Shown in pieces: positions 320 to 63,512 of a stretch of 64,000 nt of DNA. The number at the start of each line of letters is the position of its first letter. The stretch's first letter is position 1. The notes under the pieces were generated by a model, which saw nothing but the letters and a program-made list of their open reading frames with translations, ran no database searches and was not told the DNA's origin. The position numbers were made by a program, and so were the translations under genes. This DNA comes from Octopus bimaculoides (taxonomy: Eukaryota): contig NC_068991.1 in assembly GCF_001194135.2 (NCBI RefSeq), forward strand, positions 16,668,638 to 16,732,637. The letters run 5' to 3'.

Positions 320-2548
320 CCACCAGTGCTAATACCGTCATCACCATCACACCATGATCAACACCACAACTGACTCCATAATAACCATCACATTGTCAGT
401 ATCATCATCATCATTAATACCACCACCAATACCATCATCACCATAAATATATCAATACCATCACCATCACATTATCACTATCATCATTGTCATCATCATC
501 AACACCACAACTGACACCATAACCATCACATCATTACTATCATCTTTGTCATCATCACCACCATCACCATCACATTATCACTATCATCATTGTCATCAAT
601 ACCACCACCACCACCATCACATCACTATCATCATTGTCTTCATCATCATCATCAACATCATTATTGTTGTCATTGTCGTTATGGTCATCCATTTAACTGA
701 TGCTCTTCCTGTTGCCAACCTTCACTTGTTTCTCAGTGAGGAATTATTCCTCAGTGGCCAGACATGTTTACACAGAAGACTGGAAACAAATGACACCAAT
801 TGTATGACAGTGACACTCATTTACAGCTATCATGTGATGTCAAGACAAGGAGACACAAACACACAAACACAGGTGTCATCATCATCGTTTAACATCTGCT
901 TTCTATGCTCGCATGAGTTGGACAGTGTGACAGGAGTTGACCAGCCAGAGAGGAGCCCAGGCTCCAATTGTCAGTTTTGGTATGGTTTCTATGGGTGGAT
1001 GCCCTTCCTAATTCCAAACACTTTACAGCATGTATTGATATATTCATATACACAATGGGCTTCTTTCAGTTTCTGTGTACAATACCATACAAGTCCTTTA
1101 ACCCCTTGATGTTTGTTGGAGCACTGCAGCCATGCAGTGTATCTTGAGCAAGAAAGCCGAGCAGAGCCTATCCCTCTCCAGGCTAAACTCATTTCTACAG
1201 CTGAGTGGACTGGCGCAACATGAAATGATGTATTTTGTTCAAGAACACAATGGGTCACTCAGTCCAAGGATTAAAACTACAATCTTATCGTCGTGAATCC
1301 AACACCCTAACCACTAAGCGACGTGCCTCCACTCATAATGGTACTTGTTTCTACAGCTGAGTGGACTGGAGCAAGACCACAACCTGGTCCAGGAATCAAA
1401 ACCATAATTTTACAATCATGAGTCCAACAACCTAACCACAAAGCCACACGCCTCCACAGTTCCTGTCTACTAAATGAAATTACAAAGCATTGGTCAGCCT
1501 AGGCCTTAGCACAAAGGATTTGCATAAGGTGCCATGCAGAGGGACTGAACCCAAAACCATAGAACAGAGAAGCAAAATTCCTCATCACACAGCTATGCCG
1601 AGATAATCAATAGACAACAGCACTTTCCATGCTACAATATGTCTTTTCAACATGTGATAAAAATTAGGTTAAAGCTCAAGACAGGATATAAAAGTTCATT
1701 GCTCGGTGGACCACATTTTATACCTGAAAGCTTCGGGTCATAAAATTGACTCGCTAATGCTTCTCAACACTTACCTAACACTGATCAAGTGTTCTGTCTG
1801 GTTTAATTCTCATGTTTGCCTTCTGAGAGGACAGAAATAAAATAAAATAAACTACTTTGCCTAAGGACACAATGATATGCCTTCTAGTCTAGGAAACAAA
1901 CCTGTGACCTTTTGATCAAGAGCCCAGTTGTCTAACCACTAGGCCACGCTGAACAGTAAAATATAGATAAGTAAATATATGTACGTGTATATATATATAT
2001 ATATATATATNNNNNNNNNNNNNNNNNNNNNNNNNNNNNNNNNNNNNNNNNNNNNNNNNNNNNNNNNNNNNNNNNNNNNNNNNNNNNNNNNNNNNNNNNN
2101 NNNNNNNNNNNNNNNNNNNNNNNNNNNNNNNNNNNNNNNNNNNNNNNNNNNNNNNNNNNNNNNNNNNNNNNNNNNNNNNNNNNNNNNNNNNNNNNNNNNN
2201 NNNNNNNNNNNNNNNNNNNNNNNNNNNNNNNNNNNNNNNNNNNNNNNNNNNNNNNNNNNNNNNNNNNNNNNNNNNNNNNNNNNNNNNNNNNNNNNNNNNN
2301 NNNNNNNNNNNNNNNNNNNNNNNNNNNNNNNNNNNNNNNNNNNNNNNNNNNNNNNNNNNNNNNNNNNNNNNNNNNNNNNNNNNNNNNNNNNNNNNNNNNN
2401 NNNNNNNNNNNNNNNNNNNNNNNNNNNNNNNNNNNNNNNNNNNNNNNNNNNNNNNNNNNNNNNNNNNNNNNNNNNNNNNNNNNNNNNNNNNNNNNNNNNN
2501 NNNNNNNNNNNNNNNNNNNNNNNNNNNNNNNNNNNNNNNNNNNNNNNN

Positions 2549-2581: not shown

Positions 2582-3000
2582 TTACTGAGATCCTCCTCTA
2601 GTATGTGCCACTTGGTGAAGAATGAAGTTTGATATAGCTACCCTCATGTGCACCTCTTGCCGTGAGGTAGGTTCATCTGGGACTCTCAACAGGAAGAGGT
2701 CCAGCCTTGATATAAAAATGCCTACATCTACTTTGTGCAGGTTCTTTAGACTCTTTGGGAGAATATTAAAAAGCTGTGGGCCCCTGAAACTCAGGTTGTT
2801 GCAGTAACTAGTCTTGAAGCACAATGGCATTATGGCATCTTTGGCACTGTGCAGTGTCAATCTGTTTTGGCATTGGTGTAGCTGTCAATGCCAAAATTTG
2901 ACACAATTCCTTCCAAGATCTCCCAGATGTATATTACTGCATACCTCTCCCACCTTCACTCTAGGGAGTAGAGTCTTAGCTGTTTCAGCCTTTCCCAGTA
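2582..3000 (-). mobile_element. 3' fragment of a CR1/L2-group LINE ORF2 (decayed)
   Basis: Minus strand gives ERLKQLRLYSLE*RWERYAVIYIWEILEGIVSNF and then SFRGPQLFNILPKSLKNLHKVDVGIFISRLDLFLLRVPDEP, the typical CR1/L2 C-terminal motifs. Contains stops and a frameshift. Confidence 0.8.
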
Positions 3001-4984: not shown

Positions 4985-5390
4985 ATCATCATCATCATCA
5001 TCGTTTAACGTCCACTTTACACGCTGGCATGGGTTGGACGATTTGACTGAGGACTGGCAAAACAGATGGCTGCACCAGGCTCCAATCTGATCTGGCAGAG
5101 TTTCTACAGCTGGATGCCCTTCCTAACGCCAACCACTCCAGGAGTGTAGTTGGTGCTTTTACGTGTCACCGGCACGAAGGCCAGTCTGGTGGTACTGGCA
5201 ACAGCCACACTCATATGGTGTTTTTTAGGTGCCGCCTGCACAGGAGTCAGTCCAGCGGCACTGGCAACGACCTCGCTCAAATGTTTTGTTCACGTGCCAG
5301 TAAGGCAACACTGGTAATGATCACTCTCAAACGGTACTTTTTACATGCCCCCAGCAAGGAAGCCAGACAGCTGCCCTGGCAGTAATCCCA
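4985..5390 (+). mobile_element. Interspersed repeat family C, read from its (ATC)n-tail side
   Basis: (atc)n-gtttaacgtcc..catgggttgga..ggctccaat..gatgcccttcctaacgccaacc recurs at about 890, 9700, 12000, 22220, 27740, 37150 and 41630. True orientation not determined. Confidence 0.65.
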
Positions 5391-7519: not shown

Positions 7520-7900
7520 AACTTGTTTCAGTCATTTGACTGTGGCCATGCTGGAGCACCGCCTTTAGTCGAGCAAATCGACCCCAGGACTTATTCTTTG
7601 TAAGCCTAGTACTTATTCTATCGGTCTATTTTGCCGAACCGGTAAGTTACGGGGACGCAAACACACCAGCATCGGTTGTCAAGCGATGTTGGGGGGACAA
7701 ACACAGACACACAAACACACACACATATATATATATACAACAGGTTTCTTTGAGTTTCCGTCTACCAAATCCACTCACAAGGCTTTCGTCGGCCCGAGGC
7801 TATAGTAGAAGACACTTGCCCAAGGTGCCACACAGTGGGAATGAACCCGGAACCATGTGGTTGGTAAGCAAGCTACTTACCACACAGCCACTCCTATGCC
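7520..7900 (-). mobile_element. Abundant bipartite SINE with internal microsatellite (family A), near full length
   Basis: Modules ggagtggctgtgtggtaag..gtagacggaaact and gtccccc..gaccgatagaataagtactaggcttac..cagtcaaatgactgaaacaagt recur roughly 20 times in the window, e.g. about 13000, 23000, 29900, 32750, 34100, 35900, 39200, 43500, 47300, 53700 and 63300. Confidence 0.8.
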
Positions 7901-10900
7901 TATGTGCATATATATGTATGTAAATGCATCATATGTTATAATACCCAGATGAATAATGTTAGATGAATATGTTACATACTATAATACAACAAAGTGTTGG
8001 AGAATATTGGTCAGTGATGATGCTGCTTCATGTTACTTTCATTTGTCTGCTTTGTTATATTCTTGTTAGGAACAATTCCAATCTGATTTTACCATTTTAG
8101 TGATGAGAATAAATTGATCATTCTCATTAGACAGGATCAATTATTCAATTAAGAAGTCAAGCATCATGCTCAGAAGTCCAAAACTAATTATCTAAAGTCA
8201 AAACCAATAAATAGGTCAATATTCATTAATGAGTTGTTGTTTTTTTTCTTTCCAAGAATTAGTCACTTTTGATTTTGCTAGGCTCAAAGCCTCCAATCTT
8301 CATATTAGAAGAAACATGATGTAATGACTCTCATACCACTTTATTTTTTTTTCTTTCTCATTCTCGGAGGGGTTTTTCCATTCATTCAACCATCTTCTCT
8401 GTCCCCTATTCCTGGGAGGATCATGGTAGTAAAGTTCTCAGGCACGTCCTCCTTGGGTCTTATAAGAAGCAACTGTCATTACACTTTCTAGCTGGATTCC
8501 CGAGTGTGATCAACTGATCTTTTCTACTCTAAGCACAAGACCCGAAATTTTTGGTGAGGGGGCCAGTTAATTACATCGACCCCAGTACGCAACTGGTACT
8601 TAATTTATCAACCCTGAAAGGATGAAAGGCAAAGTCGACCTCAGCGGAATTCGAACTCAGAACATAAAGACAGACAAAATACTGCTAAACATTTCACCCC
8701 GCATCTAACACTTCTGTCAGCTCACCGCCTTGAGATGATAGATATTATCCAACCATCTCAAATGCACAGTAAATGGGTGTTTTTGTAGAACAGACCCCCA
8801 CCCTGCACAACACGTCTCTCACTGTTCCAGCCCCTACCCCAACCCCACTCCCCACATCTGTCCTTCGACATCACTTTTTCTTTCATTTTCTCATTCACAA
8901 CTTTACAGCCTAGTGTTAAGGCTATTATTTTTCTTCCTTTCGCAAATTCTTCCTCGTGCAGGCCCCGCTATGGATCAAGGTTGACCATGCGTCTGCACAC
9001 ACATGTGCAGGCCCAAGCAAGATTTTTCTGAGGAAAGCTGGCAGTTGCCATTTTCCAAAATTATTCTCAAAAGCATTTGAAACAAAAGCAGTGTATTTCA
9101 ATGGAAATATAGTAAGAAAAGGATTAATGCCATGACATAGTTTTATATTTTAAATGTCTAGTAAATCATAGGACTTGGCTTCAAATCCACGGTGTGTATT
9201 GTCTTGCTTTTTATGTTTTTGTTAAGGTTTAGTAAGAGAAAGAGGGGGCAACATTCATGACCTTTCTGTAGGGCATCTAAAATTGGTAGAGGTGAAGGTA
9301 TAAATGACCATATCTCATGGTTGTTGCAGTAAGAAGCAGAACATCCAGAGATCAAGTTACAGTTAAACTGGAGACTTGGTGTAAATGCTTACAACACAAA
9401 TTAGTCTATGAAAAGCCATTAAGTGCCATGTGGATTATTCTAAAAACATGAACAGTTCCTTTGATGGGCTTCTATACAGTTTCCATCTCCCTAATTTTCC
9501 TCAAGACTCGGGCTGACCCACAGCTACACTAGAAGATACCTGTACAAGGTACCAAGAAATGGAATCAAACCCACAATTAGGTGTTTGCAAAACAAAATTC
9601 CAACTATGTACCCCCTTCACAGCAAAACATCTGCTTCTGTCTCTCTGTCACACTTTAAGCATTCATCATCTGACACAAGATCACCTCCTCTCAAAGATTC
9701 CTTGTCTTGCAAAGTTACTTGGTGACTCTGCCAGTACTGGTGCCACTTAAAAAGCATCCCATCCACACTGTAAAGTGGTTGGCATTTGGAAGGGCATCCA
9801 GCTGTAAAAAACATGCCAAAACTGACCTCACTTATGATGCCATGTAAAAAGCACTCAGCCCACTCTGATGGGTAGTTGGTGTTAGGAAGGGCAACCAGCC
9901 ATAAAAACCATGCCAAAACAGACACAGAAGTATGGTGCAGGCTTCTGCTTGGCCGGCTCCTATCAAACCATCCAATCCAAGTCAACATGGAAGAAGGATG
10001 TTAAATGATGGTGGTGATGACGATGATGTCCAAGACTGTGTGTGAGTACGTTTTCAGGCAGCGTAATTAATTCTATAAACTCAAGTCTCCAAAGCTGTTG
10101 AGCAAATAGGTACCAAAATCTTCTGAAAATATAACCTTAATCTGTGATAGATTGAGAAACCCATATCTTTTTTTTGGCATTCAAGTTGAAATTTTTCAGA
10201 TCAAAATTTACATCCCTCACTCAAACAAAAGATAGATTAACTTATACACCTAGATGGATTTGGAGGACCTAAAATTCCATGTGAAATGCAGCAGGATTTG
10301 GAAAGATAGAGATGATCCTTCAATGTTTACACTACGTACTATGTCAATTTGTATGCCAAAAATACAGTACTTTCCAAAAGGAAGACTTATCTCTTTTCTC
10401 ATACCCAAAAATCCAGGGCCATGCATCTAGAAACTACTTTTTGTGGAGAGCTTAAGAGGCAATGTTGTGCAGAACTACGAAGTGTGAAAATATGGTAATA
10501 AAGAAGAGGATATGGAAGTGAGTGGCAGATGCTAAGTAGCCATGAAGATAAAGATTATTAAAGCTCCTGTTGATGATTAGGTGTATGGAAATTAATTGGA
10601 TATCCAGTAAAACTAAAAGCAAGATAAACATCATTAAGAATTTGTTGTTGAAGGAATGGTGGATCAGATAATAAAGGGGAATGGTTAGATAACTACTTAA
10701 ACATTCTGTGAACGTGTGGAGTCAAGTTAAATTCAAATGAAAATGGAAGTCGAAAGAACCCTTGCTAAAAAAAAAAAAAAATAATGAATGCAAAAATTAC
10801 AAAAAATAAATGCAAACAATAAAAATAAATTTTTAAAACTACTAAAAATTAAATGCAAAAACAAAAAAAAATTATAGAAAATAACTGACTGCAAAGTTGT

Positions 10901-20610: not shown

Positions 20611-21375
20611 TAGATGCCTGAGTAATAAAACAGGGCACTTTAGGCAAGGAATTAATCCTTTGCTACATTCCAGGGACCCTATATAGAGAAAGAGAAGTAA
20701 TAAGTTTTAGAGGGACCACCTTTGGTTCTATAATACAAATTCCCTGAGTAATAGATGCTTGAGTAATAAAACAGGGCACTTTGGGCAAGGAATTAATCCC
20801 TTGCTACATTCCAGGGACCCTATATAGAGAAAGAGAAGTAATAATNNNNNNNNNNNNNNNNNNNNNNNNNNNNNNNNNNNNNNNNNNNNNNNNNNNNNNN
20901 NNNNNNNNNNNNNNNNNNNNNNNNNNNNNNNNNNNNNNNNNNNNNNNNNNNNNNNNNNNNNNNNNNNNNNNNNNNNNNNNNNNNNNNNNNNNNNNNNNNN
21001 NNNNNNNNNNNNNNNNNNNNNNNNNNNNNNNNNNNNNNNNNNNNNNNNNNNNNNNNNNNNNNNNNNNNNNNNNNNNNNNNNNNNNNNNNNNNNNNGTAAT
21101 AGATGCCTGAGTAATAAAACAGGGCACTTTGGGCAAGGAATTAATCCCTTGCTACATTCCAGGGACCCTATATAGAGAAAGAGAAGTAATAAGTTTTAGA
21201 GGGACCACCTTTGGTTCTATAATACAAATTCCTTGAGTAATAGATGCCTGAGTAATAAAACAGGGCACTTTGGGCAAGGAATTAATCCCTTGCTACATTC
21301 CAGGGACCCTATATAGAGAAAGAGAAGTAATAATTTTTAGAAGGACCACCTTTGGTTCTATAATACAAATTCCCT
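20611..21375. repeat. 141-bp tandem repeat spanning a gap
   Basis: The unit start tagatgcctgagtaataaaacagggc occurs at 20611, 20752, 21100 and 21241 (period 141 on each side of the gap). Confidence 0.8.
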
Positions 21376-28731: not shown

Positions 28732-29407
28732 ATCCCAATTTCTATTGCTATATGTTATATTTTAATAATTACTGATATTTTATATATTATATACATAAGG
28801 CATAATATGTCATACATGTATGTATATTGTTATGATTGTCTTTTTAGTAAATAAATAAACTGACATAATATAATGTCTATAAGTTGATGAATACCACCTA
28901 TTAACCCCCTCCATTTTCTTATTGCTCTCTCTCTATATATATATATATATATATCAGAGGCATATATTCTGGGTATGTTAGGTGTGCGTTGCACACCCAT
29001 GGAAAATGGCAAATTCATTATAAGCATTAACCTTACTAATTAATTTAATCACAAATCTTAATGGAAAACTTTTGTTATAGCCTTGCTTGAAATTTGGTGG
29101 CATTGGGTGTGGTAGCACACCCAATACAACAACCACCACATGCCATATATTCTTCAGGATGATAGATACTCAGGAACATAGCCAGGCTGCTTACGATAAA
29201 GAACTCACACAACTGAGTGTCTGTCAGCTGTAAGTCCAACAAAATAAATCACACCACAGATAGTTCCTGAAGAGCCTTGTAATGAAACAAAATATATTTT
29301 GTCACACTGCAGTTATAGATTAAACATGTGCACATGCACACACGGCATAACTATAGTTTGCTGCCCCACTGCCAAATTTTTCTCATAACTTTATTAATAA
29401 TTGTTTC

Positions 29408-29680
29408 AGTAATTTTTCAGATTAACATCCACACGATCTTCACTAGGGTGTTAGGGTTAGGGTTTTAGGGCTAGGGTAAGGGTTTTAGGGTTAGTTTTAA
29501 GGTTAGGGTTAGTGTTTAGGGTTACGGTTACAGACGGAATTCCCTAACCCAAACCCTAAAACCCTAACCCTAACCCTAAAACTAACCTAAAAACCCTAAC
29601 CCTGACCCTGACCCTAAAACCCTAACCCTGACCCTAAAACCCTAGTGAAGATCGAGCAGGTGTTAATCTGAAAAACTACC
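29408..29680. mobile_element. Palindromic non-autonomous DNA transposon with telomere-like arms, copy 1
   Basis: Exact 8-bp TSD ATTGTTTC (29400-07 and 29681-88). Unique TIRs of about 40 bp (..TTTTCAGATTAACA..CACGATCTTCACTAGGG), with inner (TTAGGG/TTTTAGGG)n facing (CCCTAA/CCCTAAAA)n. Confidence 0.85.
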
Positions 29681-30027
29681 ATTGTTTCTAAGCATCAGCA
29701 AGTCAATATCATCGATCCCATTATTTTACTGATGGAAAAGCAAAGTTGACCCTAGTTGAATCTGAACACCGGGTGTTAAGAGTTCAGAATAAATACAGAA
29801 CAAGGATTTTTTTTTTTGGGGGGGGGGTCCATAAAATTGTGCAATGATACATTTTCAAAGGTGCAGATGATTATTGTGTTGATGAATTCTTTTTTAATTT
29901 GTGGCTGTGTGGTTAGAAGCTTGCTTCCCAACCACATGGTTCCAGGTTCAGTCCAACTGCATGGCATCTTGGGCAAGTGTTTTTCTACTATAGCCACAGG
30001 TCGACAAAAGCTGTAAGAGTAGATTTG

Positions 30028-30272
30028 GGTAAATTTTCAGATTAACACCTGCACGATTTTCACTAGGGTGTTACGGTTACGGTTTTAGGGTCAGGGTTAG
30101 GGTTTTAGGGTTAGTTTTAGGGTTAGGGTTAGGGTTTTAAGGTTAGGGTTTTAGGGTTGGGGTTTTAGGGTTAGGGTATTCCGTCCCTAACCCTAAATCC
30201 CTAACCGTAACCCTAAACCATAACCTTAACACCCTAGTGAAAATTGTGCGGGTGTTAATCTGAACATTAACC
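30028..30272. mobile_element. Palindromic non-autonomous DNA transposon with telomere-like arms, copy 2 (inserted in a SINE)
   Basis: Exact 8-bp TSD TAGATTTG (30020-27 and 30273-80), termini GGTAAAT...ATTAACC, same TIR as copy 1. It interrupts a SINE at the gatttggta motif. Confidence 0.85.
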
Positions 30273-33200
30273 TAGATTTGGTAAACAGAGACTGAAAAAG
30301 CCCGTGTCGTATGCGTTTATCATTGTGTCTGAGTTTGTCTTTCACCACCACTTGACAACCGGTTTTAGTGTGATTACACACCTCGTAACTTAGCGGTTCG
30401 GCAAAAGAGACCGATAGAATAAGTACCAGGCCTGAAAAACAATAAGCACTGGGTTCGATTCATTTGACTTATAATTCGAGGCGGTGCCCCAGTATGGCCG
30501 CAGTCTAATGACTGAAACAGACAAGCTATCATTTTAAGCCGTCAGTTACTCGTAACCATTGCACAAGCAAAAATAATTGTGTGTATGTGTATGTGTGTGC
30601 GTGTGACACACACACACACACACACGTCCCAGTATGGCCACAGCCGTAGAGTGGAAACCAGTGAAAGAAAAAAGATTTCGACTGTTTGTGTGTACATATC
30701 TTTTAAACTATCTGTATCGGCCGACTGAAGAGGAAATGATATAGCAAATGCTATCGTGTGCAAGCTAAAAGATAGGAACCTAGTCTGAGAGAGAGACAGA
30801 AAGACAGAGTAATATAAAGAGGTAGATAGAGGGAGAGAAACAGAAAGAAAGAGTAATATAAAGAGGTAGATAGAGGGAAAGAGAGAGAGAGAGACAGAAA
30901 GAGAGTGGCAGAAAGAGAGGAGATAAAAAGAGAGGAATCAGAAATAGAGGGGGGGGGTCTTCGAAAGAAAGAAAGGGAGATAGAGAGGAGTAGAGAGGGA
31001 AGAAATAAAAGAGAGCAGGAGATAAAAAGAGACTGAGGGGGAATAAAAAAAACAGAGATAAAGACAAAAAATAGAGGTGTGGACAATAAGATATTGTAAA
31101 AGAGAGAGGAAGAATGAGAGGGTTAGAAAAAGCAGTAGAGAGAAAATATAAGAGAGAGAGAGAGAGAGAAAGCCTGTGCGTGATAAGTGAGATTTAACAC
31201 TCCTGCTAAGGTCCTACATGTGTGTATGTGTGTGCACGCATATTCATGAGTATAATTTACGAGTGTATACACATGTTTATATATACAACAAAAACGGAGA
31301 CAAAAGAACTTAGGCGCAAAATGTGAAGAGCACGCATACACACACACACACACACACACACNNNNNNNNNNNNNNNNNNNNNNNNNNNNNNNNNNNNNNN
31401 NNNNNNNNNNNNNNNNNNNNNNNNNNNNNNNNNNNNNNNNNNNNNNNNNNNNNNNNNNNNNNNNNNNNNNNNNNNNNNNNNNNNNNNNNNNNNNNNNNNN
31501 NNNNNNNNNNNNNNNNNNNNNNNNNNNNNNNNNNNNNNNNNNNNNNNNNNNNNNNNNNNNNNNNNNNNNNNNNNNNNNNNNNNNNNNNNNNNNNNNNNNN
31601 NNNNNNNNNNNNNNNNNNNNNNNNNNNNNNNNNNNNNNNNNNNNNNNNNNNNNNNNNNNNNNNNNATATATATATATAAACACGCATTTATATACACACA
31701 CACACACACACACCAAACATTCACACATGACAGACATCACGGTTTATTAGATACAAATCTATGTGAGGTTATGATTTATACACACACACACAGGCATACG
31801 CACTGCCTTCCCCCCACTCTCACACAAGACAAGCACACGTATACTCATATGCACCTCTCCTACGCACATATATGCAGAGCCTTTCACGCACGTACAGACA
31901 CACGCACACAGTCATGCTGCCTCGTTGATACACACTGCTTCTCTCTTTCTCTCTAACACACACAGACATAGCCTCTTTCATACACACACAGACTCACAGG
32001 AATTGTTTGATTGCATGAGATAATGGCAAAAGCAGACAAGCGATGTTGAACAATTAAACAGACCAGTGAACACACACATATACACATCTATGTAGAATGT
32101 GTGAGCGTCAGTATATATTGTGTATGTAAATAAGTGCATGTGTGAGTTGCATTAACAAATTTATTCAGACATGAAAACGTATAGCAAAAAAAATAGACAC
32201 ACACACACACTAAAACACATATACACATTAAATAAATAAATATATATATATATAAACAGGCATTAAAAAATGGTGCAAAAACATCTACATATGTAAAGTA
32301 CATATAGATATACGCATGCATATAAAAAAACCCACATATATAAATATGTGTGTGTGTTTGTGGATACATACATATGCATACACAGACAATATATTTAGTA
32401 TCATTTGAGTAAAAACCTCGTAACATGCACGTAAGAGCTCTAACATCGTTATTTGGTTAGCACATGTTATCCTATCGTAGGGCATATTTCATGACTGGAT
32501 GCGCATGCAGAACTCCTCTTTGCATAAGAACACAAGAATAATATAACGAGGATGGAGGCTAATCAGGCTTTAGTAGATCACGACATTTGTTTCTGCACAA
32601 CACACCAGTTTTGAGTTGCTGAGTTTATATTCATAAACCATTATAGATAGAATATTATTCTCTATGATTATTACATGGTTGAATATATTTCAGCAACAGC
32701 CATATGTGGGTGCTTTCATCGTGGTTGTATGGTAAGAAGCTTGCTTCCTAACTACATGGTTCCGGGTTCAGCCCCACTGTGTGGTACCTTGGGCAAATGT
32801 CTTCTATTATAGACTCTGGCCGACCAAAACCTTGTGGATGGATTTGGTAGATGGAAACTGAAAGAAACCCGTCGTGTGTGTGTGTATATATATGTATATA
32901 TATATATATATAAAAGAATAAGCAACACGGATCAAAAAATCAAAAGGGTGCCTACGCATAAATACCATATTCAACCTTGAATCTATATCTAAACTGTATA
33001 TATATATATATATATNNNNNNNNNNNNNNNNNNNNNNNNNNNNNNNNNNNNNNNNNNNNNNNNNNNNNNNNNNNNNNNNNNNNNNNNNNNNNNNNNNNNN
33101 NNNNNNNNNNNNNNNNNNNNNNNNNNNNNNNNNNNNNNNNNNNNNNNNNNNNNNNNNNNNNNNNNNNNNNNNNNNNNNNNNNNNNNNNNNNNNNNNNNTA

Positions 33201-35850: not shown

Positions 35851-36791
35851 TGTATTGTATACATATGTAGATCTCTTTTATCATTTACTTGTTTCAGTCA
35901 TTAGACTGCGGCCATGCTGGGGCGCCGCCTTGAAAATTTTTTAGTCAAATGAATCGAGCCCAATACTTAATTTTGTTAAGCCTGGTATTTATTTTACTGG
36001 ACTCTAATGCCGAACCGCTAATTTACGGGGACGTAAACACACCAACACCGGTTGTCAAGTGCTAGTGGGAGAACAGGCACAGGCACAAAGACAGATACAC
36101 ACATACACAGGGCTTCTTTCAGTTTCTGTTTACTAAATCCCCTCACAAGGCTTCGGTCGGTCTGAAGATATGGTAGAAGACACTTGCCCAAGGTGCCACA
36201 CAGTAGAACTGAACCAGGAACCATGTGGTTAGGAAACAAACTTCTTACTACACAGCCACGCCTGCACCTATTATGTAAGTACATAGGTGTGTACTTCGAT
36301 AGTTCTACCTTAGAAGGTACGAACAAAGGAGTACTCGGTAACAGACATAATGGTTACTCTTTTTACAACCTGAACAATCAATGGTAGAAAAGGAAGCGGG
36401 TGGTAAAGCAATGACTCATCAGCTTCTTACAAATACGAATACACTGCCATCATCATCATCATTTAACATCTACTTTCTGTGCTGGCATGGGTTGGCTGCG
36501 TTATTGCACTCAGAGTTACTGACTTCATAGGCAGGTTGGCGGACTACACCATGCATGAATGCTTCAATTGGTTTCAATAGCTGAATGCCTCTCCTGTTAC
36601 TCGGTGTGTGTGTGTGTGTGTGTGTGGATAGATAGATAGATAGAAAGTATGGGGGTTAATATTGTATACGACTTGATGTTTGCCTTGCCTTAATGTTTGT
36701 TGTCCTCATTAACAATAATAGACAGACAAACAGATAGATAGATAATAGATACAAATATATAAACACACACATATTCATATATATATAAATA

Positions 36792-37918: not shown

Positions 37919-39682
37919 NNNNNNNNNNNNNNNNNNNNNNNNNNNNNNNNNNNNNNNNNNNNNNNNNNNNNNNNNNNNNNNNNNNNNNNNNNNNNNNNNN
38001 NNNNNNNNNNNNNNNNNNNNNNNNNNNNNNNNNNNNNNNNNNNNNNNNNNNNNNNNNNNNNNNNNNNNNNNNNNNNNNNNNNNNNNNNNNNNNNNNNNNN
38101 NNNNNNNNNNNNNNNNNNNNNNNNNNNNNNNNNNNNNNNNNNNNNNNNNNNNNNNNNNNNNNNNNNNNNNNNNNNNNNNNNNNNNNNNNNNNNNNNNNNN
38201 NNNNNNNNNNNNNNNNNNNNNNNNNNNNNNNNNNNNNNNNNNNNNNNNNNNNNNNNNNNNNNNNNNNNNNNNNNNNNNNNNNNNNNNNNNNNNNNNNNNN
38301 NNNNNNNNNNNNNNNNNNNNNNNNNNNNNNNNNNNNNNNNNNNNNNNNNNNNNNNNNNNNNNNNNNNNNNNNNNNNNNNNNNNNNNNNNNNNNNNNNNNN
38401 NNNNNNNNNNNNNNNNNNNNNNNNNNNNNNNNNNNNNNNNNNNNNNNNNNNNNNNNNNNNNNNNNNNNNNNNNNNNNNNNNNNNNNNNNNNNNNNNNNNN
38501 NNNNNNNNNNNNNNNNNNNNNNNNNNNNNNNNNNNNNNNNNNNNNNNNNNNNNNNNNNNNNNNNNNNNNNNNNNNNNNNNNNNNNNNNNNNNNNNNNNNN
38601 NNNNNNNNNNNNNNNNNNNNNNNNNNNNNNNNNNNNNNNNNNNNNNNNNNNNNNNNNNNNNNNNNNNNNNNNNNNNNNNNNNNNNNNNNNNNNNNNNNNN
38701 NNNNNNNNNGAGAAAAAGAAGTCCCAAAATATTTTTCTTGGAGAAAGGGTTAAATAGAGAATTCTAGTTGAAAAGCAAACGGTGAGAAGAGGGAAGTCTG
38801 TGAAGTACTCTGAAACCGGACAAGAATGGTTGGAATGATATAGGTAGCTTAAATATGTAGAATATGGTTATAGTAATAACATGGTAAACAGTGGAAGTGT
38901 CCATGATGATGATGGTGGTGGTGGTGGTGGTGGTGGTGGTTATGAAGATATTTTGTAATGGTGGAGTGATGGTGGAAGTAATGGAAGAGATGGATATAGA
39001 GATGGTGGTAGAAGTGGGTTTATTTTGTGGTGGTGGTAGTAGTGATAAGGACACTGGTGGTAGGAGTAACATTTTTTTTGATAGTTGTAGCGGTGACGGT
39101 GGTGACGGTAATGGTGACAACTGGTGGTGGTGATGGTAATGGTGGTGATGGCAGTATTATATGCTGTTTAGCCCCACATCTTTTATCTTCCACTTGCTTC
39201 TGTCACTAGACTGCAGCCATACTGGGGCACCGCCCTGAAGAATTTTAGTCAAACAAATTGACCCTAGTACTAATGTTTTTACCTTTTTTGTGTGTGTTTG
39301 AAGCCTGGTGGCACTTATTGTATTGATCTATTTTTGCCAAACCACTAAGATACATGGACGTAAACACACCAACACCAGTTGTCAATTAGGAATGGTGGAC
39401 AAACATAGACACAAAGATATATACATATATACAAATGGCTTCTTTCAGTTTCCATCTATCAAATCCATTCACAAGGCTTTGGTTAGCCCAAGGCCATAGT
39501 AGAAAACACTGCCCTCAGGTGCCACACAGTGGGACTTAACCTGGGACCATGTGGCTGGAAAGCAAACTTCTTACCACACAGCTATGCCTGATCGGTGTAA
39601 CAATCAAAGGCGTTCCAGCATTGATCATTTCAATTTGATTTTTGTAAGATACAGTTGTATTGAGGACTACATTATCCAATGT

Positions 39683-40072: not shown

Positions 40073-42019
40073 ATTATCCAATGTACCTTTTTTCTAAAAG
40101 ACTTCTGGATATGATTTGAGGGAGATTTGGCTGTTATTTCTTGCAAGTCAAGTGAATACATAGAGGATGCCTCATAGATATGCAGCCTTGCTGCTGTCAA
40201 TGACAAGGATGATGGATGAGGCAGTGAATGTAGGATGTGGCAGTGGTTGTTTCTGTTGACGTTTAACCCTAGGTCAACCCTGATTAATCAGACCTATAAT
40301 GAAAGGCATTCCAGTCATGACCATCCTACTCTTTATTTATGAGGGGGGGGGGGTATCTAGAACAACATTACCCGATACATGAGCCTTTCCTTCTCAACGA
40401 AGTTGATTAGAGAGGTGAGAATGTGGTTGCTATGTCTAGCATGATTAGTGGTCACACGGTGGCCACACATGTTGACCGTCTGTGTTAGTGGTGATACTGA
40501 TGATGATGGTGATACCAGTGTTGACAAATGTGGTGGTGATTGTGAGGGTGGCAATGGTAGTGGCGGCAGTGGTGCTAATTATGATAGTGATGGTAATTAT
40601 GGTGGTGGCTGTGGTGGTAATAGTCGTGGAAGGAGAAGTAGTAGTAGTAGTAGTAGAAGGAGTGCTAGCAGCAGCAGCAGCAGTGGTATTCATAACAAGG
40701 TGGTGGTGGTGGTGGTGGTACTGGTTTATTTGTTTTATTATTTACTCTAAGCTGGCAGACTGGCAAAACAGTAAGCCTGCCAGGCAAAACGGTTAGCAAT
40801 ATTTCTTCCAGCTCTTTATGTTCAAAGTTCAAATACTGCCAAGGTCAACTTTGTCTTTTCATTATTTCAGGATCAATAAAACAAAAAAAAAAAAAAAGGA
40901 CCAGTCAAGTACTGGGGTTGACATAATCAAGTAAACCCCACCCACACCCCATTCCTGCCAAAATTGCTGGCCTTGAGTCGAAATTTCAGACAATTCTTTA
41001 TTTACTGTATATCACCAATTCATAAACAATGGCATCCTTTCTTACACGTTTCCAACAGACCAAACACTGGTTCACTGTATTTCTGATAATGAGAGTGACA
41101 AGAGAGTGTCTGTAACTCAATGCAGAACAAATATCTCAAGGGGCATCATTCTTAAAGCAACAGTTTTTCAATTTTGCTCAACAATGTCTATACCCTTTGC
41201 CAATATACATCACTGAAAGTCTCACACACACACGTGCACACAAACAGACACAAACACACACACTTGTTTATTCATTGCATATCCTGCCCCAGAAAAACTA
41301 CACAACCCCATGACAGCATGAAAGAGCATGTATATTATATGCGTTTCATATATGTGTACATTTGCATACATAGATCTAATAAAGAATAACAGAAAAAGCT
41401 TCAATATCAAAATATATATGTGGGTGTGTGTGTGTACATATATATATATATATATACATATATTCTTTCACCTGTTTCAGGCATGTGACTACACCCATGC
41501 TGGAGCACCACCTTACATATGTATATATAAGGCACAGATATGGCTGTGTGCTAAGACGCTTCCTTCTCAATCACATGGCTCCAGGTTCAGTTCCACTGTG
41601 TAGCAGCTTGTGGACGTGTCTTCTACTATAGCTGGCATGGGTTGGACAGTTTGACAGAAGCCTGCACCATACTTCTGTGTCTGTTTTGGCATGGTTTTTA
41701 TAGCCGGTGGCTGTTTGCCCTTCCTAACACCAACCACCCCGCAGAGTGGGCTGAGTGCTTTTTATGTGGCACTAGCACAAGCAAGGTCAGTTTTGGCATG
41801 GTTTTTACAGCTGAATGCCCTTCAAAATACCAACCACTTCACAGTGTGGATTGCATGCTTTTTAAATGGCAAGGTAACTAAGTAACATTGCAAGACAAGG
41901 AATCTTTGAGACAGGAGGGTGCAGTGAAGGTGGTGGACTTGCATCAGATGATGAATGGTTAGAGTGTGACAGAGACAGAAACAGGTGTCTTGTTCTAGAG
42001 GAGGTACATGGTTACCTAG

Positions 42020-49306: not shown

Positions 49307-49692
49307 GTGGAGGCGCAATGGCCCAGTGGTTAGGGCAGCAGACTCGCGGTCGTAAGATCACGGTTTCGATTCCCAGACCGGGCGTTGTGAGTGTTTATTG
49401 AGCGAAAACACCTAAAGCTCCACGAGGCTCCGGCAGGGGACGGTGGCGAACCCTGCTGTACTCTTTCACCACAACTTTCTCTCACTCTATCTTCCTGTTT
49501 CTGTTGTACCTGTATGTCAAAAGGGGCAGCCTTGTTGCACTCTGTGTCATGCTGTATCTCCCCCGAGAACTACGTTAAGGGTACACGTGTCTGTGGAGTG
49601 CTCAGCTACTTGCACGTTAATTTCACGAGCAGGCTGTTCCGTTGATCGGATCAACTGGAACTCTCGACGTCGTAACCGACAGAGTGCCATAC
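49307..49692 (+). mobile_element. tRNA-derived SINE, full length with TSD
   Basis: Same family, with the 12-bp TSD aatccttttgtt (49295-306 and 49693-704). Confidence 0.88.
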
Positions 49693-50416
49693 AATCCTTT
49701 TGTTACCATATTTCTGTTAAAATACCCTACCTTTGTTTAAATTAACTTTGGGAAGCAAGCTTCTTACCACACAGCCATGTCTGTGCCTATATGTATGCGC
49801 ATAAAATAAATATTAGCAATGGCTATCAACTCTCTTTGTAGATAGAAAGGTGAAGAGTATTTATCAACTGAAGAGTGGCCAATCAGCTATAAAATACAAT
49901 GGGAATAATCTCATTTTTTTTTTCTGTGGAACAAGGTGTATTCATAGTTGTTTACTTTCCTCAACACACTTATTATAAACTATAGGCTAACTACTTTAAA
50001 TTTACCTTATATTTTCTTAAACATGCTGTTTGTACACAAAATATTCATTAAGCATTTAATCATGCTGCCAACTAATGCATAATATGCAAATTAGTGTTGC
50101 CATTTCTGCTAACTTTTAGTTTATACCACATTTTAGTTGCATTTCTCTTTTTTCTATTTCTGAAAGGAGAAGAATGGTTGAAGTATTGTTTAAATTTACC
50201 TTCAATCATATGTAGTATTTACGGGCAATGTTTAAGGTTTACCTTGGTGGAGGTAATTTCCAGTGTAATCACTTCAATATTGCAGGACTGGTTAAGAGGT
50301 CTATGTTATAATTCTGCATGTGCAGTTAGCATTGGTTATTTTAGTTTATTAACTTATTATTAAGTTTTTCATATACATGGTACAACTGTAACCCAATTTA
50401 AAATTATTTCCGTTAA

Positions 50417-62115: not shown

Positions 62116-63426
62116 CGATTGTGCTACAACTTGTCTATCATTTCAACATAAAAGCATGCACTAAGCTTCTTTTCTACATAACAGGTAATTTTTTTAAGCC
62201 TAACCTCAACCTCTCTCTCTCCCTCCTTCACTCTCTCTTTCACTATCCCTCTCTCTTTCTCTTTGTTTTTCTCACAGTTTAACTGTTCCTCTCTCTTTCT
62301 CTCTTTCACCTTTTATTTTGTAAAGGATTTTCATTTATTTATTTATTTATTTAACAAAATTGTATTATAATATGTTATTTATAATGTTATTTATACATAG
62401 AAAATACAAATTCTTTTTTATTTTATTTCACTTTTACTGAAGTAAAGAAAATAGGAAAACAGAGTCGATATTTTTATAATTATTTTTAGCTTTTCATTGG
62501 TTATATTTATTATTTATTTATTCATTTATTTAGTTTTACTTTTCCTGAATTAGAAAAAGAAAGGGAAAACTTGTTTTTTTATAATTATTTCTAGCTTTTT
62601 TTTTTGTTGGTTATATTTATTTATTTATTGTTTTAAAAGGAGTGGGGCAGATTCAGTTTTCCCTTTTCTATTTATATATTTTCTCTCCACCTCTTCCTCT
62701 TTCCCCTCTATCTCTCTCTCTCTCCCCTTCTCTCTCTTTCACTCTCTCTCTCTCTCTCTCAGATATTTCATATTCAACTCCTCCCTTGTTTATACCTGTC
62801 TCTCTCACTTTCACTCTTTGTCAGTCTCTCTTTCTCACTCTACACACACATACATTACACACTCACATAGATATATACTTATGTACATATATATATACAC
62901 ACATAAAAATATACATTAACATATGCATGCATGCATTCACATGCATACACATATCTACAAACATACACACAAATGTACATACACACTTCCATACATACAT
63001 ACATACATACATACACACTTCTATACATACATGCATACAGACATAAATACATAAACACTTTCATTTATATATACATATGCTCATGCACACATATGTACAA
63101 GCATAAGTTCATACATACACACATGCATAAATACATATTTACATACATATTTAAATAAATAATTACATACACAACTTACACAGACACACACACACATGCA
63201 TGCAAACATACACATACATACATACATGTGTACATGCGTACTTACATACATACATACATACTCTTTTATTTGTTTCAGTCATTTGACTGTGGCCATGCTG
63301 GAGCACCACCTTTAGTCAAACTGATCAACCTCAGGACTTATTCTTTGTAAGCCTAGTACTTATTCTATCAGTCTCTTTTGCCGAACTGCTAACTTACAGA
63401 ATATGCACACCACTTGTTTTCAGCAT

Positions 63427-63512
63427 TTAGGGTAACGGTTACAGTTAGGTTTAGGGTTAGGGTTAAGTTTAGGGTTAGGGTTTGGTTTAGGGTTAGGTTT
63501 AGGTTTAGGGTT
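63427..63512 (+). repeat. Degenerate interstitial telomere-like tract (TTAGGG/TTTAGG)
   Basis: ttagggtaacggttacagttaggtttagggttagggttaagtttagggttaggg..., one orientation only. Confidence 0.7.

What the first reader, a model, noticed from the sequence alone, without database searches (positions are those of the whole stretch)
29400..30280. Telomere-repeat-bearing palindromic MITE with 8-bp TSDs (Merlin-like), two copies about 350 bp apart
Each copy looks like a telomere fusion site, (TTAGGG)n facing (CCCTAA)n. But both are bounded by the same unique TIR of about 40 bp and by different exact 8-bp TSDs (ATTGTTTC and TAGATTTG), so they are transposed units. Three of the four termini read 5'-GGT. 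GG termini with an 8-9 bp TSD fit Merlin/IS1016 better than hAT, whose ends are usually CA/TA. The central spacers (gacggaat and attccgtc) show opposite orientations, and the proximity suggests local hopping. Copy 2 interrupts a SINE, so it post-dates that insertion. Such an element would scatter inverted telomere-like tracts that could bind telomere proteins, form G-quadruplexes or cruciforms, seed healing of breaks and mimic fusion scars. I do not know of a description of this element; the function is inference.
Basis: partly seen in the sequence, partly recalled or inferred. Interest (0 to 1): 0.8.

Follow-up and report, generated by a model that had tools for sequence, protein, structure and literature searches.

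The report
Telomere-repeat foldback transposon in octopus
Two copies of a small, non-coding cut-and-paste transposon with inverted arms made of telomere-like repeats lie 347 bp apart in octopus DNA, showing that sequences resembling telomere-fusion scars can be spread by transposition; the enzyme that moves it was not found.

Summary
Copy 1 (29408-29680, 273 bp) and copy 2 (30028-30272, 245 bp) are near-palindromes. Each has a 41-bp unique terminal inverted repeat, then G-strand telomere-like units, an 8-nt loop, and the C-strand units. Both are flanked by exact 8-bp duplications. Copy 2 splits a SINE; joining its flanks restores the SINE with one copy of the 8-mer, so it is an insertion.

The window is octopus DNA, probably Octopus bimaculoides. 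I found two relatives with the same termini. One is an 89-bp deleted copy in O. bimaculoides (42/42 identical terminus, still carrying CCCTAA units). The other is a 3.1-kb foldback element in O. sinensis with an exact 8-bp duplication (AAAAAAAT) but 120-bp subrepeats in place of telomere-like ones.

It is therefore a foldback-type, non-autonomous DNA transposon family, and the telomere-like tract is inherited cargo. The arrays are only telomere-like: 13 of 50 units are exact TTAGGG, in a 20-bp higher-order period.

The Merlin call fits (GG ends, 8-bp duplication; a verified octopus Merlin has both). It is unproven: no transposase shares the termini, and Mutator/Foldback is not excluded.

No published description was found. 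Repbase and Dfam could not be checked.

The parts
29400..29407 (.). Target-site duplication of copy 1, left (ATTGTTTC)
   Evidence: Identical to 29681-29688; flanking bases differ, so it is exactly 8 bp
29408..29680 (-). Copy 1 of the foldback MITE (273 bp), inverted relative to copy 2. Left arm 29408-29532, loop GACGGAAT 29533-29540, right arm 29541-29680. The 41-bp unique termini are 29408-29448 and 29640-29680.
   Evidence: Folds as a single DNA hairpin, -93.5 kcal/mol, z = -17.3
29681..29688 (.). Target-site duplication of copy 1, right (ATTGTTTC)
29901..30027 (+). 5' part of the roughly 366-bp SINE split by copy 2 (includes the left duplication at 30020-30027)
   Evidence: The joined flanks align without a break to full SINE copies at 35890-36259, 7524-7891 and 39195-39582, which carry TGGATTTG or a close variant (GGGATTTA in one) once at the site
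30020..30027 (.). Target-site duplication of copy 2, left (TAGATTTG)
30028..30272 (+). Copy 2 of the foldback MITE (245 bp). Left arm 30028-30177, loop ATTCCGTC 30178-30185, right arm 30186-30272 (about 60 bp shorter). The termini are 30028-30068 and 30232-30272.
   Evidence: Hairpin -70.4 kcal/mol, z = -13.6. The left terminus is 42/42 identical to the O. bimaculoides copy L011:8976-9017
30273..30280 (.). Target-site duplication of copy 2, right (TAGATTTG)
30281..30519 (+). 3' part of the interrupted SINE
63427..63512 (+). Possible solo arm of a further copy. It is a G-strand-only telomere-like array with an 18-bp period, and has no terminus and no C-strand arm.
   Evidence: Aligns to copy 2 positions 44-137, including the degenerate 'TTAG-TTTAGGG' landmark unit. 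The upstream match to the terminus is not significant (61 of 500 shuffles score as well). Membership is unproven.

Best explanation
These are two insertions of a non-autonomous, foldback-type (near-palindromic) DNA transposon family of octopus genomes.

Each copy has four parts in order: a 41-bp unique terminal inverted repeat (consensus GGTAAATTTTCAGATTAACACCTGCACGATTTTCACTAGGG), an arm of telomere-like units (TTTTAGGG TYAGGG TTAGGG), an 8-nt loop, and the mirror-image arm. It encodes nothing.

It is moved in trans by a DDE-type cut-and-paste transposase. That enzyme recognises the termini, excises the element, and integrates it at a target cut with an 8-bp stagger. Repair of the stagger gives the 8-bp duplication.

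The telomere-like tract was already in the master copy and is carried along as cargo. It was not made at each site by telomerase or by chromosome fusion. The long palindrome is unstable, so copies lose arm sequence.

Status of each step:
- Shown: insertion, the 8-bp duplication, shared termini, homologous arms, lack of coding capacity, and presence at other loci and in a second species.
- Inferred: the cut-and-paste mechanism.
- Open: which transposase. Merlin is the best single guess, at roughly even odds.
For: Structure and insertion:
- Exact 8-bp duplications flank both copies.
- Paralogous empty site: removing copy 2 plus one 8-mer restores a contiguous SINE, and full SINE copies elsewhere in the window carry that 8-mer (or a close variant) only once.
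- The terminus occurs only at element ends.

The arms descend from one array:
- The arms of copy 1 and copy 2 share a gapless stretch of about 105 bp at 88% identity.
- Each long arm contains the same odd unit, TTAGTTTTAGGG, once (the left arm of copy 1 has the variant TTAGTTTTAAGG).
- The arms share the same first units, CTAGGG TGTTAGGG TTAGGG TTTTAG.

Relatives elsewhere:
- L011:8929-9017 (O. bimaculoides chromosome CM046617.1) is an 89-bp internally deleted copy. It is 42/42 identical to copy 2's left terminus and still carries CCCTAA units. Its flanks are TATATATA and TGTATATA.
- L004:161-3272 (O. sinensis CM016860.1) is a 3,112-bp palindrome with termini GGTAAAATTACAGATTATCACCCCCACGATTTTCACTAAG (33/38 identical). 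It has an exact 8-bp duplication, AAAAAAAT. It has no ORF with a Pfam match.
- Overall, 7 of 8 termini begin GGT.

The Merlin lead:
- The Merlin literature gives GG termini, 8-9 bp duplications and inverted repeats of 24-462 bp. It also reports 191 Merlin protein hits in O. bimaculoides (PMC8101967).
- A real octopus Merlin (L004:4266-12986, 8,721 bp, 305-aa PF12762 transposase) has GGC termini, 355-bp inverted repeats and 8-bp duplications at three loci.
Against: - No autonomous element with these termini was found. No Merlin remnant occurs in the window.
- The one octopus Merlin whose ends I could define shares nothing with the MITE termini beyond chance.
- Only four to five family members were seen. 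Two of them come from the window that was picked because of them.
- The duplication of the 89-bp copy lies in a (TA)n tract and matches at only 7 of 8 positions.
- Transposition activity has not been observed. There are no orthologous empty sites and no polymorphism data.
Confidence: 0.82

Rival explanations
1. It is the same kind of element but belongs to another superfamily. It would be mobilised by a Mutator/Foldback-type transposase, or less likely by hAT or P, rather than by Merlin.
For: - The architecture (long inverted arms made of tandem subrepeats around a tiny loop) is that of Foldback-like elements. From my own knowledge, these have been tied to the Mutator (FB) and P (Galileo) superfamilies.
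- Mutator-type elements often start with G-rich ends, have long inverted repeats and make 8-10 bp duplications.
- In O. vulgaris, Mutator (55 families, 13.9 Mb) and hAT (134 families, 16.6 Mb) are more abundant than Merlin (18 families, 2.2 Mb) (PMC13282606 supplement).
- There is no similarity to the verified octopus Merlin termini.
Against: - Three of the four duplications seen are exact 8-mers and the fourth matches at 7 of 8. The usual values are 9 for FB/Mutator and 7 for Galileo (my own knowledge).
- The termini do not fit the hAT end motif (YARNG) or P-type CA ends.
- GG plus 8 bp is the published Merlin signature.
Confidence: 0.4
2. The repeats are not of telomeric origin. They would be subterminal transposase-binding repeats that grew by slippage from the inner end of the terminus (…CACTAGGG) and only resemble the host telomere motif.
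For: - The terminus itself ends in CTAGGG and runs straight into TGTTAGGG TTAGGG.
- Only 26% of units are exact TTAGGG, and the array has its own 20-bp period.
- In the O. sinensis relative, the same position holds about 120-bp subrepeats that each end in an echo of the inner terminus, GGAATTTTCACAAGG. This shows the family builds its arms from terminus-derived repeats.
Against: - The commonest core unit is the TTAGGG motif reported for marine invertebrates generally (for molluscs specifically, from my own knowledge). Convergence on it by chance is unlikely, though not impossible.
- The G strand runs 5'->3' from the terminus towards the centre in both arms. A folded-back chromosome end would give the same arrangement.
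Confidence: 0.35
3. They are independent head-to-head telomere fusion or telomerase-healing scars formed in place, not mobile elements.
For: (TTAGGG-like)n facing (CCCTAA-like)n is the classical fusion signature.
Against: - The same 41-bp non-telomeric termini bound every copy.
- Exact 8-bp duplications flank the copies.
- There is a clean paralogous empty site in a SINE.
- The arms share idiosyncratic units.
- Copies occur at unrelated loci and in a second species.
Confidence: 0.02
4. It is an assembly or sequencing artefact (chimeric fold-back reads).
For: The window is a gapped draft (6,107 N), and palindromes are a known artefact class.
Against: - The two copies differ from each other and between their own arms by about 10-14%.
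- Family members occur in an independent gap-free (probably long-read) assembly of another species (L004, no N).
- The duplications and the SINE context are biologically coherent.
Confidence: 0.01

Closest known systems
Merlin superfamily non-autonomous elements (IS1016/IS1595-related DDE transposons)
   Same: 5'-GG termini, 8-bp target-site duplication, and inverted-repeat length within the published 24-462 bp range. Merlin is unusually rich in O. bimaculoides (PMC8101967). The octopus Merlin I delimited behaves the same way at its ends.
   Different: No transposase partner shares the termini. There is no sequence similarity to the one verified octopus Merlin terminus.
Foldback-like transposons (Drosophila FB, Galileo, Tetris; sea-urchin TU elements)
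   Same: Almost the whole element is two long inverted arms built from short tandem subrepeats, with a unique outer domain and a tiny loop. The elements are non-coding and structurally unstable. Tetris is cited in PMC5615363; the rest is from my own knowledge.
   Different: The duplication is 8 bp (FB 9, Galileo 7). The element is much smaller (245-273 bp). The subrepeats here are the host's telomere-like motif.
Tandem-repeat-containing MITEs of molluscs (e.g. DTC84 of Donax trunculus, pearl of oysters)
   Same: A mollusc MITE whose core is a tandem array that can seed or spread satellite-like DNA (cited in PMC5615363).
   Different: In those elements the array is a direct array between short inverted repeats, not a mirrored array. 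None is reported to be telomere-like.
Ciliate telomere-bearing elements (TBE1-3 of Oxytricha)
   Same: Cut-and-paste transposons that carry the host telomeric repeat in inverted orientation at both ends (PMC4724952).
   Different: TBEs are autonomous Tc1/mariner elements with a 3-bp ANT duplication. They carry a single 17-nt telomeric stretch at the outermost tip of the inverted repeat. Here the repeats lie inside a unique terminus, are 90-110 bp per arm, and the element is non-coding.
Interstitial telomeric sequences (fusion-type head-to-head arrays; short arrays inserted at break repair)
   Same: Internal telomere-like tracts, here in head-to-head arrangement.
   Different: Those form in place and have neither inverted-repeat termini nor target-site duplications. 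[quoted passage not shown]

Membership tests
MITE / non-autonomous TIR DNA transposon | Terminal inverted repeats bounding a short element | tested here: met
   41-bp unique termini at all four ends
MITE / non-autonomous TIR DNA transposon | Target-site duplication of fixed length, with an empty site lacking the element | tested here: met
   8 bp at copies 1 and 2 and at L004; 7 of 8 at L011. A paralogous empty site exists in a SINE
MITE / non-autonomous TIR DNA transposon | No coding capacity | tested here: met
   All frames are closed within about 40 codons. The 3.1-kb relative has no Pfam match
MITE / non-autonomous TIR DNA transposon | Multiple dispersed copies | tested here: inconclusive
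   4 certain members at 3 loci in 2 species. Outside the window, that is 1 in about 66 kb of O. bimaculoides and 1 in about 240 kb of O. sinensis/vulgaris. No whole-genome count was possible.
Merlin superfamily | 8- or 9-bp target-site duplication | tested here: met
Merlin superfamily | Inverted repeats beginning 5'-GG | tested here: met
   7 of 8 termini begin GG; one begins AG
Merlin superfamily | Autonomous partner with the same termini encoding a DDE_Tnp_IS1595 transposase | tested here: inconclusive
   I fetched 13 octopus loci around Merlin genes of at least six lineages. None has these termini next to the gene. Other lineages, including the one most abundant in O. bimaculoides, could not be fetched.
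Merlin superfamily | Terminus similarity to a verified Merlin of the same host | tested here: not met
   Against the ends of Merlin 'F', the local alignment score was reached by 182-281 of 300 shuffles
Foldback elements (FB / Galileo type) | Long inverted arms made of tandem subrepeats with a short or absent middle | tested here: met
   Arms of 87-150 bp made of 6-8-bp units around an 8-nt loop. The relative L004 has 3 x 120-bp subrepeats per arm
Foldback elements (FB / Galileo type) | Duplication of 9 bp (FB, Mutator-related) or 7 bp (Galileo, P-related) | tested here: not met
   8 bp throughout
hAT superfamily | 8-bp duplication together with termini of the YARNG type | tested here: not met
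   The duplication length fits. The termini read GGTAA, and the boundaries are fixed by the SINE empty site
Telomere fusion / in-place interstitial telomeric sequence | Head-to-head telomeric arrays with no transposon termini or duplications | tested here: not met
   Termini and duplications are present, and the arms are homologous between copies

The most novel reading that the evidence does not exclude
The family began as a real chromosome-end accident. A transposon end lay next to a telomere or a healed break. The end folded back or fused with its sister chromatid, giving terminus-(TTAGGG)n-loop-(CCCTAA)n-terminus, that is, a fusion scar bounded by two inverted transposon ends. The transposase could then mobilise it. 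Since then, thousands of inverted telomere-like hairpins would have been scattered through the octopus genome. There they could bind telomere proteins, stall replication, seed break healing, or be transcribed into hairpin RNAs that yield telomere-repeat small RNAs.
Probability: 0.12. Interest if true: 0.75.

Novelty: new variant of a known kind. Interest (0 to 1): 0.5.

Why it matters
Internal telomere-like tracts are commonly read as relics of chromosome fusions or of telomerase-mediated break repair. Here a head-to-head tract that looks exactly like a fusion scar is demonstrably a transposon insertion. In octopus genomes, and perhaps in others, such tracts cannot be taken as evidence of ancestral fusions without checking for termini and duplications.

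[quoted passage not shown] If the family is as abundant as the small sample hints, it would add many long perfect-hairpin, G-rich sites to the genome. Such sites are candidates for fragile sites, small-RNA sources or binding sites for telomere proteins.

On the ordinary side, foldback MITEs with tandem-repeat arms are a well-known kind of element. This family is probably already masked, unnamed, in automated octopus repeat libraries.

Tried and rejected
DNA scans:
- Exact or degenerate terminus patterns in the metagenome, prokaryote-genome and viral collections gave 0 hits. This was expected, since none of them holds cephalopod DNA.

Protein searches used as a route to more sequence:
- A protein search with translated terminus peptides, used as a proxy for a nucleotide search, found nothing at E<=10.
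- A SINE-derived ORF returned one Octopus vulgaris protein, which served to identify the host.
- A chimeric query of ten Octopus Merlin proteins returned no octopus protein, although exact look-ups later showed that they are in the collection.
- Route that worked: I took Merlin protein sequences from the supplement of PMC8101967, found them by exact look-up, and fetched their loci.

Merlin partner and motif tests:
- tblastn of Merlin proteins against the window found no remnant.
- Merlin 'F' as the partner is rejected on terminus sequence.
- The shared short motifs are not significant: TCAGATTTCCGT in Merlin F, TCAGATTTTTTCCGT in the L004 foldback, ATTCCGTC in the MITE loop.

Other tests:
- Derivation of the terminus from the SINE: not significant.
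- A paralogous empty site for copy 1: none, because its flanks are unique.
- Rfam: only sub-threshold generic hairpin matches. There is no tRNA.

Literature:
- Ten full-text searches, including the terminus sequence itself, found no description of this element.
- The O. vulgaris curated repeat paper does not print its library.
Full report
**Observation**

The region holds two near-palindromic units.
- Copy 1 is 29408-29680 (273 bp), flanked by ATTGTTTC at 29400-29407 and 29681-29688.
- Copy 2 is 30028-30272 (245 bp), flanked by TAGATTTG at 30020-30027 and 30273-30280.
- They lie 347 bp apart.

Each unit begins and ends with the same 41-bp non-repetitive sequence, consensus GGTAAATTTTCAGATTAACACCTGCACGATTTTCACTAGGG. 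The 35-nt core of this terminus matches only at element ends: 3 of the 4 within 3 mismatches, against 0.00 expected, with the fourth recovered by a 12-mer search. Three of the four ends start GGT and one starts AGT.

Telomere-like 12-mers are strongly enriched: 28 matches against 0.18 expected.

The 8-nt centres are GACGGAAT and ATTCCGTC, which are reverse complements. The full alignment is also better with copy 2 inverted (score 232 against 198; 90% identity over aligned columns).

**Proof of insertion**

Copy 2 lies inside a SINE of about 366 bp.
- I removed 30028-30280 and joined the flanks. The result aligns without interruption to full SINE copies at 35890-36259, 7524-7891 and 39195-39582 (79-71% identity).
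- In the multiple alignment those copies read ...GTGAGTGGATTTGGTAGAC... (minor variants between copies), with the 8-mer present once.
- This is a paralogous empty site. It fixes the element boundaries and the 8-bp duplication, and shows that the insertion is younger than the SINE.

Copy 1 sits in unique sequence, so no such test was possible. Its duplication is unambiguous all the same, because the bases on either side differ.

**Anatomy**

After the terminus each arm consists of units ending in GG(G). The recurring pattern is TTTTAGGG, TYAGGG, TTAGGG, a 20-bp higher-order period.
- Of 50 units, 13 are exact TTAGGG and 9 are exact TTTTAGGG.
- The tract is therefore telomere-like rather than telomeric.

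The arms are homologous to one another, not independent arrays.
- The left arms of the two copies align gaplessly for about 105 bp at 88% identity.
- Each long arm has one copy of the degenerate unit TTAGTTTTAGGG (the left arm of copy 1 has the variant TTAGTTTTAAGG).
- Three of the four arms begin CTAGGG TGTTA, and the right arm of copy 1 begins CTAGGG TTTTA.

The array was therefore present in the master element and is carried by transposition.

Arm lengths differ: 125 and 140 nt in copy 1, 150 and 87 nt in copy 2. This shows loss of sequence from the palindrome.

As single strands both copies fold into one long hairpin:

| Copy | Free energy (kcal/mol) | z against shuffles |
|---|---|---|
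| 1 | -93.5 | -17.3 |
| 2 | -70.4 | -13.6 |

G-quadruplex motifs are present in the G-rich arms. All reading frames close within about 40 codons.

**Host**

The window has no evident coding gene; its ORFs of at least 90 codons are low-complexity or repeat-derived. Several lines point to an Octopus genome, most probably O. bimaculoides.
- A SINE-derived ORF hits a single protein, from Octopus vulgaris.
- Window repeats match repeats in fetched Octopus loci at 88-92%.
- The window has the N-run pattern seen in the O. bimaculoides loci but not in the O. sinensis or O. vulgaris loci.
- One terminus is 42/42 identical to a copy on O. bimaculoides chromosome CM046617.1.

**Relatives elsewhere**

No collection of eukaryotic DNA could be searched directly. 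Pattern scans of the metagenome, prokaryote and viral collections found nothing.

I reached octopus genomic DNA indirectly. I took Merlin protein sequences from the supplement of PMC8101967, found them by exact look-up, and fetched 15 loci of about 20 kb. Two further family members turned up by chance in the flanks.

1. L011:8929-9017 (O. bimaculoides) is an 89-bp copy. It has the first 28 nt of the left terminus, joined to CTAAAACCCTAACCCTAACACCCTAG and a complete right terminus. It sits in the (TA)n tract of a SINE, with flanks TATATATA and TGTATATA.
2. L004:161-3272 (O. sinensis) is a 3,112-bp palindrome.
   - Its arms are 90.6% identical.
   - Its termini are GGTAAAATTACAGATTATCACCCCCACGATTTTCACTAAG, 33/38 identical to copy 2.
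   - It has an exact 8-bp duplication, AAAAAAAT.
   - Its arms hold no telomere-like units. Instead they hold three subrepeats of about 120 bp, each ending in an echo of the inner terminus (GGAATTTTCACAAGG).
   - It has no ORF with a Pfam match.

A profile of the termini finds exactly these eight ends and nothing else in all the sequence held.

Leaving out the window, which was chosen because of the element, the counts are one copy in about 66 kb of O. bimaculoides and one in about 240 kb of O. sinensis/vulgaris. These numbers are too small to estimate abundance, but they suggest the family is not rare.

**Superfamily**

Evidence in favour of Merlin:
- Published Merlin hallmarks are inverted repeats of 24-462 bp with a conserved 5'-GG, and 8-9 bp duplications. 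O. bimaculoides has the most Merlin protein hits of any protostome surveyed, 191 (PMC8101967).
- I delimited one real octopus Merlin by comparing paralogous copies. It is L004:4266-12986, 8,721 bp long, and 99.6% identical to the copy in L006. It is also present in O. vulgaris (L005, L007).
- It encodes a 305-aa PF12762 transposase and has 355-bp inverted repeats with ends GGCGATG... and GGCATAG....
- Its 8-bp duplications are GCAAATCT, CAAGGCTT and GAAACTTT.
- So the GG-plus-8-bp signature holds for Merlin in this host, and the MITE shares it.

Evidence against, or missing:
- That Merlin's ends are no more similar to the MITE termini than shuffled sequence is.
- No Merlin remnant lies in the window.
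- None of the Merlin loci fetched carries the MITE termini next to the gene.
- hAT-type and P-type ends do not fit.
- Mutator/Foldback is not excluded. It has long arms, G-rich ends and 8-10 bp duplications, and is more abundant than Merlin in O. vulgaris.

I put Merlin at about even odds.

**Origin of the tract**

Two readings remain open.

1. Telomeric origin. A transposon end lay next to a chromosome end or a healed break, and then folded back or fused with its sister. In both arms the G strand runs 5'->3' from the terminus to the centre, which matches this.
2. Slippage origin. The repeats expanded from the CTAGGG at the inner end of the terminus. The 20-bp period, the low purity, and the terminus-derived subrepeats of the O. 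sinensis relative favour this.

**Comparison with known elements, and novelty**

The element works like a foldback-type MITE. Tandem-repeat MITEs are known in molluscs, and foldback elements with subrepeat arms are classical (and my own knowledge). Transposons bearing the host telomeric repeat are known in ciliates: the TBEs are Tc1/mariner elements carrying one 17-nt stretch at the tip of the inverted repeat.

I found no description of a metazoan MITE whose mirrored arms are telomere-like arrays. A review treats mobile-element transport of telomeric repeats as only a possibility. Ten full-text searches, including the terminus sequence itself, found nothing.

Repbase, Dfam and the octopus repeat libraries could not be queried. 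The family may well be in them as an unclassified consensus.

**Verdict**

- The transposon reading is confirmed and extended to a family spanning at least two octopus species.
- The Merlin label is plausible but unproven.
- The functional ideas are untested.
- It is a new variant of a known kind, of moderate interest. Its main value is as a caution against reading head-to-head telomere-like tracts as fusion scars, and as a concrete case of telomere-like repeats spread by transposition.

Noticed in passing
window 63427-63512: A third telomere-like array. It is G-strand only, with an 18-bp period (TTTAGGG TTAGGG TTAGG), and starts 30 bp beyond a truncated minus-strand SINE module (63264-63397). 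It aligns to the arm of copy 2, including the odd landmark unit, but has no recognisable terminus and no C-strand arm. It may be a solo arm of the same family or an unrelated interstitial tract.
   Followed up: partly
L004:4266-12986 (O. sinensis CM016860.1); also L006, L005, L007: An 8.7-kb Merlin transposon with 355-bp inverted repeats, GG ends and 8-bp duplications. Copies at different loci are 99.6% identical, and the 305-aa transposase is identical in O. sinensis and O. vulgaris. It looks very recently active.
   Followed up: partly
L004:161-3272: A 3.1-kb near-perfect palindromic element of the same terminus family lies only about 1 kb upstream of that Merlin copy. The proximity may be coincidence. 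The two share no sequence beyond (TA)n.
   Followed up: yes
L011:8929-9017 and window 30028-30272: Two of the four certain family members are inserted in copies of the same SINE family: one in its internal (TA)n tract, one 5' of it. This may be chance given SINE abundance, or a target preference.
   Followed up: no
window 49443-49745 (+): An ORF here contains ...CSVDRINWNSRR.... This recurs at the N-terminus of an O. bimaculoides 'Merlin' gene model (KOF65758.1: ...CSVDRINWNPRR...). It suggests that another repeat has been fused into that gene model.
   Followed up: no
window 9620-10000 (-), 41555-41878 (+), 941-1144 (+), 5047-5382 (+): Several ORF-like stretches share a motif (…LPNTNYPSEWAECFLHG…). 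They belong to a further unidentified repeat family.
   Followed up: no
window 2585-2884 (-): A 100-codon open frame that, from memory, resembles the C-terminal tail of a LINE ORF2 (…LDLFLLRVPDEPT…). It lies next to an N gap.
   Followed up: no
window 21096-21373: A 141-bp unit repeated twice at 98% identity. It is a very young tandem duplication in an otherwise old repeat landscape.
   Followed up: no
window 29450-29592 and 30056-30244: Rfam covariance models of several miRNA precursors match the palindromes below threshold (best MIR8643, 52.5 bits against a gathering score of 135). The matches are structural only. They are a reminder that such hairpins could be mis-annotated as, or evolve into, small-RNA precursors.
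   Followed up: yes
tool behaviour: The word-indexed protein search did not return Octopus Merlin proteins that were part of the query itself, although exact look-up shows they are in the collection. Most O. bimaculoides entries carry no contig information; only three did.
   Followed up: partly
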